IMG/VR virus record: IMGVR_UViG_3300046507_000667
Span: 62,001-126,000 of that record
Direction: 5' to 3' (one strand)
DNA length: 64,000 nt
The notes beneath the pieces were generated by a model. That model had not been told where the DNA came from, made no database searches, and was given only the letters and a program-made list of their open reading frames with translations. Positions 52,302-53,850 of the stretch are shown here, piece by piece. Position 1 is the first letter of the stretch. Every line of letters begins with the position of its first letter. Position numbers and translations under genes: made by a program.

Positions 52302-53330
52302 ATGACTACATCAAGCGGGCGTGTTAATGCAGCTGACAAGCGCATCATTAATGGACAAACTGACGTCAATCAGTTAGTACCATTCAAGTACAAATGGGCA
52401 TGGGAAAAATACCTTGCTGGTTGTGCTAATCATTGGATGCCACAAGAAGTAAATATGTCTAAAGATATCGCTCAGTGGAAAACTCCTGGATTTCTATCTG
52501 AAGATGAGAAGCGCATTGTTAAACGCAATCTTGGCTTCTTTGTTACTGCTGACTCACTAGCAGCAAATAACATCGTTCTTGGTACATATCGTTTTATTAC
52601 TGCTCCTGAATGCCGTCAGTATCTACTACGTCAAGCATTCGAAGAAGCAATTCATACACATACTTATCAGTACATTGTAGAATCACTCGGTATTGATGAG
52701 TCAGAGACTTTCAATGCATATAATGAAATTAAGTCCATTAAGGACAAGGATGATTTCCTAATTTCATTTATTAATACAATTACCGATCCAGAATTCACAA
52801 CTGGTACTCTTGAGAATGATCAACGTCTTCTTAAGTGTCTAATTGTATTTGCTTGTATTATGGAAGGTCTATTCTTCTATGTGGGCTTTACACAGATTCT
52901 AGCTCTTGGTCGTTCTGGTAAGATGACTGGTGCTGCAGAGCAGTATCAATATATTCTTCGTGATGAATCTCTACATTGTAACTTTGGTGTTGACCTTATC
53001 AATACTATTAAGTTAGAGAATCCACATCTTTGGACACCAGAGTTCCAAGAAGAAATTAAGGATCTATTTCGTCAAGCAGTTGAACTTGAATATCGTTATG
53101 CAGAAGATACAATGCCACGTGGCATTCTTGGTCTAAATGCAACTCTATTCAAGAGCTATCTACGTTTTATTTGTAATCGTCGTTGTCAGCAAATTGGTCT
53201 ACCTGAACTGTTCCCCGGTGAAGAAAATCCTTTCCCATGGATGTCAGAAATGGTTGACCTTAAGAAGGAAAAGAACTTCTTTGAAACTCGTGTTACCGAC
53301 TATCAGTCCGGTGGTGGACTAGAGTGGTAA
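52302..53330 (+). CDS. nrdB: Ribonucleotide reductase class I beta subunit
   Basis: [46 protein letters not shown]; late motif at 52230-52241. Confidence 0.95.
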
Positions 53331-53364
53331 TCTCTTTTTAATTTTTTCTTTAAAGGTAATCAAA

Positions 53365-53496
53365 ATGTCACAAGAGCAAGTACAAGCAGTTGAACCTGTA
53401 GTTGAACAAGTTGCTGCAGAAGAAGATGATTTTCTAGCTGAATTCTCAGCACCAGCAGTTTGCTCAATGGAAGAAGGTTGCGAAAGCTGCCAGTAA
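53365..53496 (+). CDS. Stand-alone 43-aa peptide resembling the NrdA C-terminal redox tail, not in the ORF track
   Basis: MSQEQVQAVEPVVEQVAAEEDDFLAEFSAPAVCSMEEGCESCQ; AAAGG SD; biased codons like nrdB. Confidence 0.7.
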   Translation: MSQEQVQAVEPVVEQVAAEEDDFLAEFSAPAVCSMEEGCESCQ

Positions 53497-53595
53497 TCCA
53501 AAGTCATTTAAGAATATATTATTTAAATGATTAAAATTCTCCCTAACCTTCTGAAAAGAGGGTTAGGGAGTTTAATAACACAGAAAGGAGGGTTC

Positions 53596-53850
53596 ATGCG
53601 TATCTTGTTTGATGATAAAGATATTTCCCTCTTGTTATTATCAGAAAAAGAAAGCATTATTAACATCGATGGTTATATGATGGTAATAGGCAAGCAAGAT
53701 GATGATAATTATTACATACGGAAAGAAGGGGATTTTCTCTTTTATGACAAAGTGGAATTGATTGAAGTTCTGAATTCCAAGAATGTAATACTACCATCAG
53801 CTTCATATCAAATCCTTCTTATAAGATACATGTTTGACAATCTTAAATAA
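53596..53850 (+). CDS. Hypothetical protein, paralog 1 of a tandem triplet
   Basis: AGGAG SD; MRILFDDKDI start. Confidence 0.75.
   Translation: MRILFDDKDISLLLLSEKESIINIDGYMMVIGKQDDDNYYIRKEGDFLFYDKVELIEVLNSKNVILPSASYQILLIRYMFDNLK

What the first reader, a model, noticed from the sequence alone, without database searches (positions are those of the whole stretch)
53365..53496. Free-standing NrdA C-terminal redox tail encoded right after nrdB
The 43-aa acidic peptide ends ...AVCSMEEGCESCQ, closely matching the C-x(n)-CExCQ terminus of proteobacterial class I NrdA. In NrdA that cysteine pair shuttles electrons from thioredoxin or glutaredoxin to the active site. No nrdA body is adjacent, and the peptide has its own SD and start. 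It may act in trans for a tail-less phage NrdA, stimulate or hijack host NrdA, or act as a thioredoxin decoy.
Basis: partly seen in the sequence, partly recalled or inferred. Interest (0 to 1): 0.75.

Follow-up and report, generated by a model that had tools for sequence, protein, structure and literature searches.

The report
Stand-alone RNR tail peptide after orphan nrdB
A 249-kb soil phage that carries only the small subunit of ribonucleotide reductase also encodes, right behind it, a 43-residue peptide that copies the cysteine-bearing end of the large subunit, so it most likely acts on the host's enzyme or its thioredoxin partner, and similar overlooked peptides exist in other phages.

Summary
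It has an AAGG Shine-Dalgarno-like site and is followed by a strong hairpin. Its last 13 residues (AVCSMEEGCESCQ-stop) are identical to the C-terminus of a full-length metagenomic NrdA, and about 95% of environmental hits to this terminus are NrdA ends. The complete phage genome (249,347 bp, terminal repeats) has no NrdA, NrdJ, NrdD, thioredoxin or glutaredoxin. The peptide is not unique. Homologous stand-alone peptides occur in an AT-rich Burkholderiales chromosome, in an Aquitalea prophage and in a Burkholderia siphophage lineage. In that lineage it sits in the same slot in all 17 loci and is under purifying selection. A phage thioredoxin family carries the same module as a C-terminal fusion. 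The tail type differs from the Burkholderiales NrdA that matches the phage's nrdB, which argues against a simple nrdA deletion remnant. My best reading is a diffusible copy of the alpha-subunit redox arm that relays electrons from host thioredoxin or glutaredoxin to host NrdA, supporting a phage-beta/host-alpha enzyme. An inhibitor or decoy role is not excluded. I found no description of it in the literature searched.

The parts
52302..53330 (+). nrdB, class Ia RNR small (radical-generating) subunit, 342 aa. It is the only RNR gene in the phage.
   Evidence: Pfam PF00268, E 2e-91. Single copy in the genome. It is 80-85% identical to Burkholderiales NrdB and 65% to Acinetobacter NrdB. The iron-ligand and tyrosine motifs ([22 protein letters not shown]) and the C-terminal YQ..LEW tail are read directly from the translation.
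53352..53357 (+). Shine-Dalgarno-like AAAGGT, 8 nt before the ATG of the peptide ORF
   Evidence: Read from the sequence.
53365..53496 (+). 43-aa acidic peptide ORF (net charge about -11, no basic residue); a stand-alone copy of the NrdA C-terminal tail
   Evidence: It was called as a gene in 5 near-identical metagenome contigs. tblastn with Acinetobacter NrdA residues 905-944 aligns to it end to end at 42.5% identity. GC3 is 0.21 against a phage mean of 0.25.
53425..53436 (+). DDFL motif (residues 21-24), shared with the other stand-alone peptides, the thioredoxin-tail fusions and the EEDGF of Acinetobacter NrdA
   Evidence: Alignments A2 and A3.
53461..53493 (+). Three-cysteine terminus C33-x5-C39-x2-C42-Q43 (CSMEEGCESCQ), with the presumed redox-active CxxC at the very end
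   Evidence: The last 13 aa are identical to the end of the NrdA in L147. C39, E40, C42 and Q43 are invariant in alignment A1 of peptides and NrdA tails. CxxC is the class I consensus C-terminal pair (PMC9669993).
53539..53570 (+). 14-bp GC-rich stem with a GAAA loop followed by UUUAAU: a terminator-like hairpin closing the nrdB-peptide unit
   Evidence: RNA fold of 53490-53600 gives -34 kcal/mol, z = -5.7, with 0 of 200 shuffles as stable. The simple terminator scan did not list it, because the T-run is too short.
53596..53850 (+). Next gene (84 aa from the ATG behind AAGGAGG), unknown function; not part of the unit
   Evidence: no family hit.

Best explanation
The ORF is a real small gene that encodes a stand-alone copy of the flexible, acidic, cysteine-bearing C-terminal arm of the class I ribonucleotide reductase large subunit (NrdA). 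It is co-transcribed with an orphan phage nrdB. The phage has no large subunit, thioredoxin or glutaredoxin of its own, so both products must work on host proteins. The phage NrdB would pair with the host's NrdA. The peptide would be kept reduced by host thioredoxin or glutaredoxin and would enter the NrdA active site as a diffusible dithiol, re-reducing the catalytic disulfide in parallel with NrdA's own tail. The phage would thereby supply the two parts that limit turnover (radical subunit and re-reduction) without carrying the roughly 950-aa alpha gene.

Shown: identity of the motif, absence of alpha and redoxin genes, the operon-like layout, the existence of a family, and selection on one branch of that family.

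Inferred: translation of this copy, binding to host NrdA or thioredoxin, and the direction of the effect (stimulation).
For: The chance expectation is zero. Adjacency to the only nrdB on the same strand, out of about 300 genes, together with the SD-like site and the hairpin after the pair, comes.

No NrdA, NrdJ, NrdD, Trx or Grx is present in a complete genome.

The same module (acidic stretch, DF-L, C-x2/3-C-Q-stop) is fused to the C-terminus of a phage thioredoxin family. This ties the tail to thioredoxin-type electron transfer and makes sense as a complete relay.

Stand-alone homologues occur in G359 (with its own SD and terminator), in an Aquitalea prophage and in a Burkholderia siphophage lineage. 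The siphophage ORF is syntenic in 17 of 17 loci while its flanking proteins have diverged to 44-69% identity, and its pN/pS is 0.03-0.3.

[quoted passage not shown] In yeast R1 the tail is needed to regenerate the catalytic pair, and the inhibitor Sml1 blocks R1 (PMC6382339 citing Zhang 2007). That the yeast tail works across subunits is from my own knowledge of Zhang 2007, which I could not read here.
Against: There is no direct evidence that this copy is translated. No RNA run was listed, and only near-identical strains carry it, so no selection test is possible on it.

Host NrdAs of the type matching the phage nrdB already have their own tail, at very high local concentration, so the benefit of a free tail is unclear.

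The peptide's terminus (C-x5-CESCQ) is not that of sampled Burkholderiales NrdAs (C-x6/10-CEACQ).

The other family members sit in contexts unrelated to RNR: a tail module, a position upstream of a membrane protein and terminase, and a bacterial island.

Complex prediction with a Burkholderiales NrdA gave no answer (score 0.02). A closely related jumbo phage relative that shares the nrdB-peptide pair was not found.
Confidence: 0.4

Rival explanations
1. Competitive mimic or inhibitor (Sml1-like, or a redoxin decoy). The free tail occupies the NrdA active-site entrance or ties up host thioredoxin or glutaredoxin. This would lower host RNR turnover or divert reducing power, for example for host shut-off, for superinfection exclusion in lysogens, or for recruiting thioredoxin to another task.
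For: Most family members are in temperate phages with no RNR gene at all. G007 and G010 are complete and lack nrdB, and the conserved slot is in a late or tail module. The mimic differs from the host's own tail in the loop before the CxxC, as a dominant competitor might. Small disordered proteins that inhibit R1 are known in yeast (Sml1; PMC6382339).
Against: In this window the peptide is co-oriented and apparently co-transcribed with nrdB, whose product needs an active host NrdA, so inhibition would defeat it. Fusion of the same tail to a thioredoxin is hard to explain as a decoy.
Confidence: 0.22
2. Non-functional remnant. An ancestor carried nrdB followed by nrdA, as in the relative G003. 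A deletion removed the nrdA body and left its last ~40 codons behind nrdB, with a fortuitous ATG.
For: The position and strand are exactly what such a deletion would leave. The related 263-kb phage G003 has nrdB followed by nrdA. The whole peptide aligns to the last 40 residues of a gammaproteobacterial-type NrdA. The chance of a 43-codon open frame in 35% GC DNA is only about 4% against, by my own estimate. No diverged orthologue is available to show constraint on this copy.
Against: The nrdB loci of G000 and G003 are not syntenic, and G003's tail is of the Burkholderiaceae type. NrdBs that accompany NrdAs with the EEGCESCQ terminus are only 48-62% identical to this nrdB, against 80-85% for Burkholderiales, so tail and nrdB did not come from one operon. 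The ORF keeps a start, an SD-like site, all three cysteines and phage-like GC3 of 0.21. Homologous stand-alone genes elsewhere are conserved.
Confidence: 0.13
3. NrdB helper. The three cysteines and the many glutamates bind iron or deliver an electron to assemble or maintain the diferric-tyrosyl cofactor of the phage NrdB. This is the role played by the ferredoxin YfaE, whose gene also follows nrdB in E. coli (own knowledge).
For: The gene position matches that of yfaE. The sequence is rich in Cys and Glu.
Against: It has no ferredoxin fold or family hit, and only three Cys. The terminus is identical to NrdA tails, not to any metal site. Other family members occur without nrdB.
Confidence: 0.07

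Closest known systems
C-terminal redox tail of class I RNR large subunit (NrdA; e.g. P. aeruginosa NrdA 5IM3, ending ACSIDNPDCEACQ)
   Same: Acidic disordered stretch and an upstream Cys followed by a terminal C-E-x-C-Q-COOH. The last 13 aa are identical to the end of one metagenomic NrdA.
   Different: It is not attached to any NrdA body, and no NrdA exists in the genome.
NrdJb, the separately encoded C-terminal cysteine-rich domain of split class II RNR (NrdJa+b) (PMC5704485)
   Same: The electron-transfer end of the catalytic subunit is encoded as its own gene.
   Different: NrdJb is a folded zinc-binding domain of about 230 aa, is encoded next to its catalytic partner nrdJa, and belongs to class II. 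Here there is a 43-aa disordered class I tail with no catalytic partner in the genome.
Sml1 / Hug1 / Spd1-type small disordered RNR regulators of yeasts
   Same: Small, disordered, acting on RNR subunits. Sml1 blocks R1 regeneration (PMC6382339 citing Zhang 2007).
   Different: They have no sequence similarity and no CxxC terminus. They are eukaryotic and inhibitory; the direction of effect here is unknown.
Phage and bacterial RNR reductants (T4 thioredoxin NrdC, NrdH, and glutaredoxin fused to NrdB in Facklamia ignava; own knowledge)
   Same: Accessory supply of reducing equivalents encoded with RNR genes. A reductant module can be linked to the beta subunit.
   Different: The peptide has no thioredoxin fold. 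It copies the acceptor arm, not the redoxin.
YfaE, the 2Fe-2S ferredoxin encoded after nrdB in E. coli (own knowledge)
   Same: A small Cys-containing gene immediately downstream of nrdB.
   Different: It has a different fold, length and cysteine pattern, and there is no family match.
Orphan nrdB in phages (two phages with only nrdB among class Ia carriers; PMC3653736)
   Same: The phage carries nrdB without nrdA.
   Different: An accompanying alpha-tail peptide was not reported there.

Membership tests
Class I RNR alpha-subunit C-terminal redox tail | Cysteine pair (CxxC, or Cx4C) within the last few residues of the chain | tested here: met
   C39-E-S-C42-Q43-stop. These positions are invariant in alignment A1 with NrdA tails. 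Class I consensus per PMC9669993.
Class I RNR alpha-subunit C-terminal redox tail | Is the C-terminal end of a polypeptide carrying the RNR alpha/beta barrel (PF02867) | tested here: not met
   nrdB ends 34 nt upstream. There is no PF02867 or TIGR02506 hit in the genome and no tblastn hit to NrdA bodies.
Class I RNR alpha-subunit C-terminal redox tail | Acidic, low-complexity, unstructured linker before the cysteines | tested here: met
   It has 11 acidic and no basic residues. It aligns with the linker of Acinetobacter NrdA. The partner pLDDT of 37-40 is compatible but weak evidence.
Class I RNR alpha-subunit C-terminal redox tail | Shuttles electrons from thioredoxin or glutaredoxin to the active-site cysteine pair | not testable with these tools
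   Complex prediction gave no answer. Enzyme assays are needed.
Split RNR catalytic subunit (NrdJa/NrdJb type) | Catalytic body encoded by a partner gene in the same genome | tested here: not met
   No class I, II or III catalytic gene is present in the complete phage genome.
Stand-alone alpha-tail peptides of phages (family defined here) | 38-60 aa ORF with no NrdA body upstream, ending C-x2/3-EEGCE(S/A)CQ-stop | tested here: met
   Members are the window peptide, G359/L142, Aquitalea P0025 and the Burkholderia phage ORFs. Fragmented-nrdA look-alikes were excluded as artefacts.
Stand-alone alpha-tail peptides of phages (family defined here) | Conservation under purifying selection | tested here: inconclusive
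   Met for the Burkholderia siphophage branch (pN/pS 0.03-0.3; synteny 17/17). It is not testable for the window copy, because only near-identical strains exist.
Thioredoxin / glutaredoxin / NrdH | Thioredoxin fold with an active-site CxxC | tested here: not met
   No Pfam hit, and 43 aa is too short for the fold.
YfaE-type 2Fe-2S ferredoxin | Ferredoxin fold with four cluster-binding cysteines | tested here: not met
   No Pfam hit and only three cysteines.

The most novel reading that the evidence does not exclude
Phages of Betaproteobacteria carry a previously unannotated family of stand-alone peptides, plus thioredoxin fusions, that copy the redox arm of the RNR large subunit. They use it to take control of the host's RNR or thioredoxin axis. 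In this jumbo phage the peptide, together with an orphan NrdB, converts the host alpha subunit into a phage-run enzyme. This would be a new class of host-takeover peptide and the first trans-acting class I RNR tail.
Probability: 0.45. Interest if true: 0.78.

Novelty: new variant of a known kind. Interest (0 to 1): 0.64.

Why it matters
Re-reduction of the active site through the alpha C-terminal tail is a slow, poorly visualised step of class I RNR, and the tail is disordered in the structures. A natural free-standing tail would be a ready-made tool to study that step in trans. It would also explain how a phage can profit from carrying only nrdB. It points to RNR regeneration and the thioredoxin system as a target of phage manipulation. 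The family is missed by annotation: it is unannotated in six GenBank Burkholderia phage records. It is also a concrete example of functional micro-proteins hidden in phage genomes.

Tried and rejected
- **Single-sequence protein search:** it found only the peptide itself.
- **Exhaustive profile search of 1.84 billion representatives:** it added only the G359-type peptide; the other hits were repetitive proteins.
- **Short 'NrdA tail' proteins in long contigs (P0105, P0110, the P0041 group) and L170:** rejected as frameshift-fragmented nrdA.
- **Complex prediction of NrdA(1-905) plus peptide:** no answer, so it is not used as evidence.
- **RNA-seq support:** no run was listed; the DNA runs are from rhizosphere metagenomes.
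- **Closer relatives of the phage via the neighbouring 426-aa gene:** none found. Other big contigs with a similar nrdB share nothing else with this phage.
- **Host-type (CEACQ) stand-alone tails in isolated phages:** only full-length NrdAs were found.
- **Read-through or fusion with NrdB:** rejected, because the ORF is in a different frame and the nrdB frame hits further stops.
- **Duplicated 3' end of a host gene at a phage attachment site:** judged unlikely. The genome ends in direct terminal repeats, the ORF sits behind nrdB, and in the siphophages it lies inside the tail module. Whether this genome encodes an integrase was not tested.
- **Other CxxC-x-stop ORFs in the genome:** none is tail-like.
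- **Taxonomic origin of the NrdA clade ending in EEGCESCQ:** not established. There is a weak Atlas hint to Bacteroidota and no close match among isolated phages.

Full report
**What is in the sequence.** window:53365-53496 (+) is an ATG-started ORF of 43 codons ending in TAA. It begins 34 nt after the stop of a 342-aa ORF (52302-53330) that is a clear class Ia RNR small subunit (Pfam Ribonuc_red_sm, E 2e-91). The iron-ligand and tyrosyl motifs and the C-terminal alpha-binding tail of that subunit are readable in the translation. AAAGG lies 8-9 nt before the peptide's ATG. Forty-three nt after its stop there is a 14-bp GC-rich stem with a GAAA loop (53539-53570). The fold of that region is far more stable than shuffles (-34 kcal/mol, z -5.7). 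The next gene most likely starts at 53596 behind AAGGAGG. nrdB and the small ORF therefore look like one two-gene unit. The peptide has 11 acidic and no basic residues and ends ...EEDDFLAEFSAPAVCSMEEGCESCQ.

**Is the resemblance to NrdA tails real?** Yes.
- A degenerate DNA pattern for EEGCESCQ-stop occurs once in the window and never in 100 shuffles.
- In metagenome contigs the same pattern gave 80 loci. Of these, 75 are C-termini of NrdA genes, mostly 1050-1100 aa proteins ending ...QPRWMKN...C(N/S)(L/M)EEGCESCQ or contig-edge ends followed by nrdB. One more is a frameshifted NrdA, three are stand-alone peptides and one is unclear.
- The NrdA in L147 ends with the same 13 residues as the window peptide.
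- tblastn with Acinetobacter NrdA aligns its residues 905-944, the very end, to the whole peptide at 42.5% identity, including PVVE, EEDGF/EEDDF and AP..CS.
- A profile of tails and peptides finds one meaningful solved chain, the last 28 residues of P. aeruginosa NrdA, 5IM3.
- CxxC at the extreme C-terminus is the class I consensus redox pair (PMC9669993).

**The genome context changes the interpretation.** The window lies in a 249,347-bp virus record with direct terminal repeats, rated complete, from rhizosphere metagenomes. It has one nrdB. It has no RNR large subunit of class I or II (PF02867, TIGR02506) and no class III enzyme. It also has no thioredoxin or glutaredoxin. tblastn with four different NrdAs finds nothing but the tail ORF. 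Phages with nrdB only are known but rare, and their function is unresolved (PMC3653736).

**Whose nrdB, whose tail?** The phage NrdB is 80-85% identical to NrdB of Burkholderiales such as Caballeronia, Paraburkholderia, Burkholderia and Cupriavidus, and 65% identical to the Acinetobacter protein. NrdAs encoded next to those Burkholderiales nrdB genes end ...CMMRPGDPGFDECEACQ or ...FCAIDDPGCEACQ. Only 1 of 401 sampled Burkholderiales genomes has EGCESCQ-stop at all. NrdBs that accompany NrdAs with the EEGCESCQ end are only 48-62% identical to the phage NrdB. Tail and nrdB thus have different affinities. Both have the phage's own codon bias: GC3 is 0.27 for nrdB and 0.21 for the peptide, against a phage mean of 0.25.

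The only clear relative found, the 263-kb phage G003, shares 91 ORFs at 25-60% identity. It has nrdB followed by a full nrdA with a Burkholderiaceae-type tail, but at a non-syntenic position. A deletion of nrdA behind nrdB would produce exactly the layout seen here, so the remnant hypothesis deserves a hearing. The discordant tail type, the intact start, SD-like site and cysteines, and the family described next all make it the less likely reading.

**A family of stand-alone tails.**
- *Burkholderia siphophages.* tblastn of the peptide against isolated phages hit an unannotated gap in six ~46-kb Burkholderia siphophages. That gap holds a small ORF ending PAVCNFEEGCESCQ. A scan of viral contigs found 15 more loci of this lineage, and two further loci of the same lineage came from the metagenome scan (L153, L194). 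In 17 of 17 loci examined the ORF sits between the major tail protein gene and the tail assembly chaperone gene, although those proteins have diverged to 44-69% identity. Pairwise pN/pS is 0.03-0.3, with the terminus invariant. Variants ending CEACQ exist. This branch is a conserved, selected gene in phages that have no RNR gene at all (G010 is complete and has no nrdB).
- *Aquitalea prophage.* It encodes a 58-60-aa version with DPDDFL...EEGCESCQ, upstream of a membrane protein and the terminase genes.
- *A Burkholderiales chromosome.* An AT-rich genome (G359, about 35% GC like the phage) has a 44-aa gene ending DDWLAESTPYCNMEEGCESCQ. The gene has its own SD and a perfect terminator hairpin, and lies between an AhpD-like CMD gene and a nuclease gene. 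That bacterium also has a normal NrdA with its own tail. None of 30 sampled congeners has the peptide, so it behaves as an accessory gene.
- *Thioredoxin fusions.* A phage thioredoxin family of 149-195 aa, with a GCRxC active site, carries the same module at its C-terminus: acidic stretch, DF-LP, then C-x2/3-C-Q-stop. One member ends EEGCESCQ.

An exhaustive profile search shows that the DDFL-type stand-alone branch is tiny: the window peptide plus the G359 type. Across these lineages the terminal motif is written with different codons, for example Ser as AGC, TCT or TCA. This points to independent lineages rather than one recent DNA transfer. The motif itself was the search criterion, so its invariance is partly by construction.

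**How it most likely works.** The module occurs in three settings: in cis on NrdA, fused to a thioredoxin, and free. That is what one expects of an autonomous electron-relay arm. In class I RNR the tail dithiol reduces the buried active-site disulfide and is then reduced by thioredoxin or glutaredoxin. In yeast the tail is required for regeneration, and a small protein, Sml1, blocks R1 (PMC6382339). In class II the corresponding domain can be a separate gene, nrdJb (PMC5704485).

I therefore favour a diffusible tail that is charged by host redoxins and discharges into host NrdA. It is expressed together with a phage NrdB that pairs with the same host NrdA. The adjacency to nrdB has a chance of roughly 1 in 150-300 by gene count (my estimate), and together with the thioredoxin fusion it supports a pro-RNR role. 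I put this mechanism at about 0.4.

The main rival, at about 0.2, is a competitive mimic that blocks NrdA regeneration or ties up redoxins. That fits the RNR-less temperate phages better but fits the nrdB operon poorly. A functionless remnant (about 0.13) and an NrdB cofactor helper (about 0.07) follow. The rest is unassigned.

Nothing here shows translation of this copy, binding, or the direction of any effect. Complex prediction gave no answer, and no RNA data were listed.

**Novelty.** Four literature searches, covering tail mimics, phage inhibitors of NrdA, trans action of the tail, and jumbo phage nrdA/nrdB, found no description of a free-standing class I alpha tail. The GenBank siphophage records leave the ORF unannotated. 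I rate it a new variant of a known kind: a known functional module, newly found as an independent phage gene. It is interesting mainly because it is directly testable with a synthetic peptide.

Noticed in passing
window:51411-51542 (+): A 43-aa ORF beginning MKSIRKQKGFTLIE... carries a type IV pilin-like N-terminal methylation motif (Pfam N_methyl, 23.4 bits against a cut-off of 21.2). It is followed by a hydrophobic helix and looks like a phage-encoded mini-pilin or pseudopilin.
   Followed up: partly
whole genome G000 (window = C1:62001-126000): The complete 249-kb jumbo phage (35% GC) has nrdB as its only RNR-related enzyme gene. It has no nrdA, nrdJ, nrdD, thioredoxin or glutaredoxin.
   Followed up: yes
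L031:4995-8966 (phage G003, 263 kb, 55% GC): The distant relative of this phage carries nrdB followed by nrdA, the reverse of the bacterial nrdA-nrdB order, at a position not syntenic with the window's nrdB. Its NrdA tail is of the Burkholderiaceae type.
   Followed up: partly
L002:3890-4045 (Burkholderia phage vB_SBP33) and L004-L022, L153, L194: A conserved small ORF ending C(N/S)FEEGCE(S/A)CQ lies between the major tail and tail chaperone genes in 17 of 17 loci. It is unannotated in the GenBank records and under purifying selection.
   Followed up: yes
L010:4155-4625 (+) and alignment A3: A phage thioredoxin family (GCRxC) has a conserved helical extension and an NrdA-like C-terminal tail (..EEPDFLP..C-x2/3-CQ). 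In L010 it sits next to a holin gene. A few members lack the terminal cysteines.
   Followed up: partly
L142:8472-8606 (bacterial genome G359, contig 19): A chromosomal 44-aa stand-alone tail peptide has its own SD and terminator. It lies between an AhpD-like CMD gene and a non-specific endonuclease gene, near an IS605-type transposase. It was not found in 30 sampled congeners.
   Followed up: partly
L241, L242 (metagenome contigs): Long-read metagenome assemblies split nrdA into several frameshifted pieces. This creates spurious 36-44-aa 'NrdA tail' proteins in the protein databases and is a trap for searches like this one.
   Followed up: yes
window:55139-56419 (-): A 426-aa protein has a long Gly/Ser/Asn-rich low-complexity middle and a weak C-terminal Peptidase_M15 / endolysin-like match.
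   Followed up: no
L028, L037, L033 (viral contigs G001, G002, G005): Other large phage contigs carry a Burkholderiales-like nrdB (78-82% identical) with no nrdA and no CExCQ-stop anywhere in the record. These records are only 82-87% complete.
   Followed up: partly
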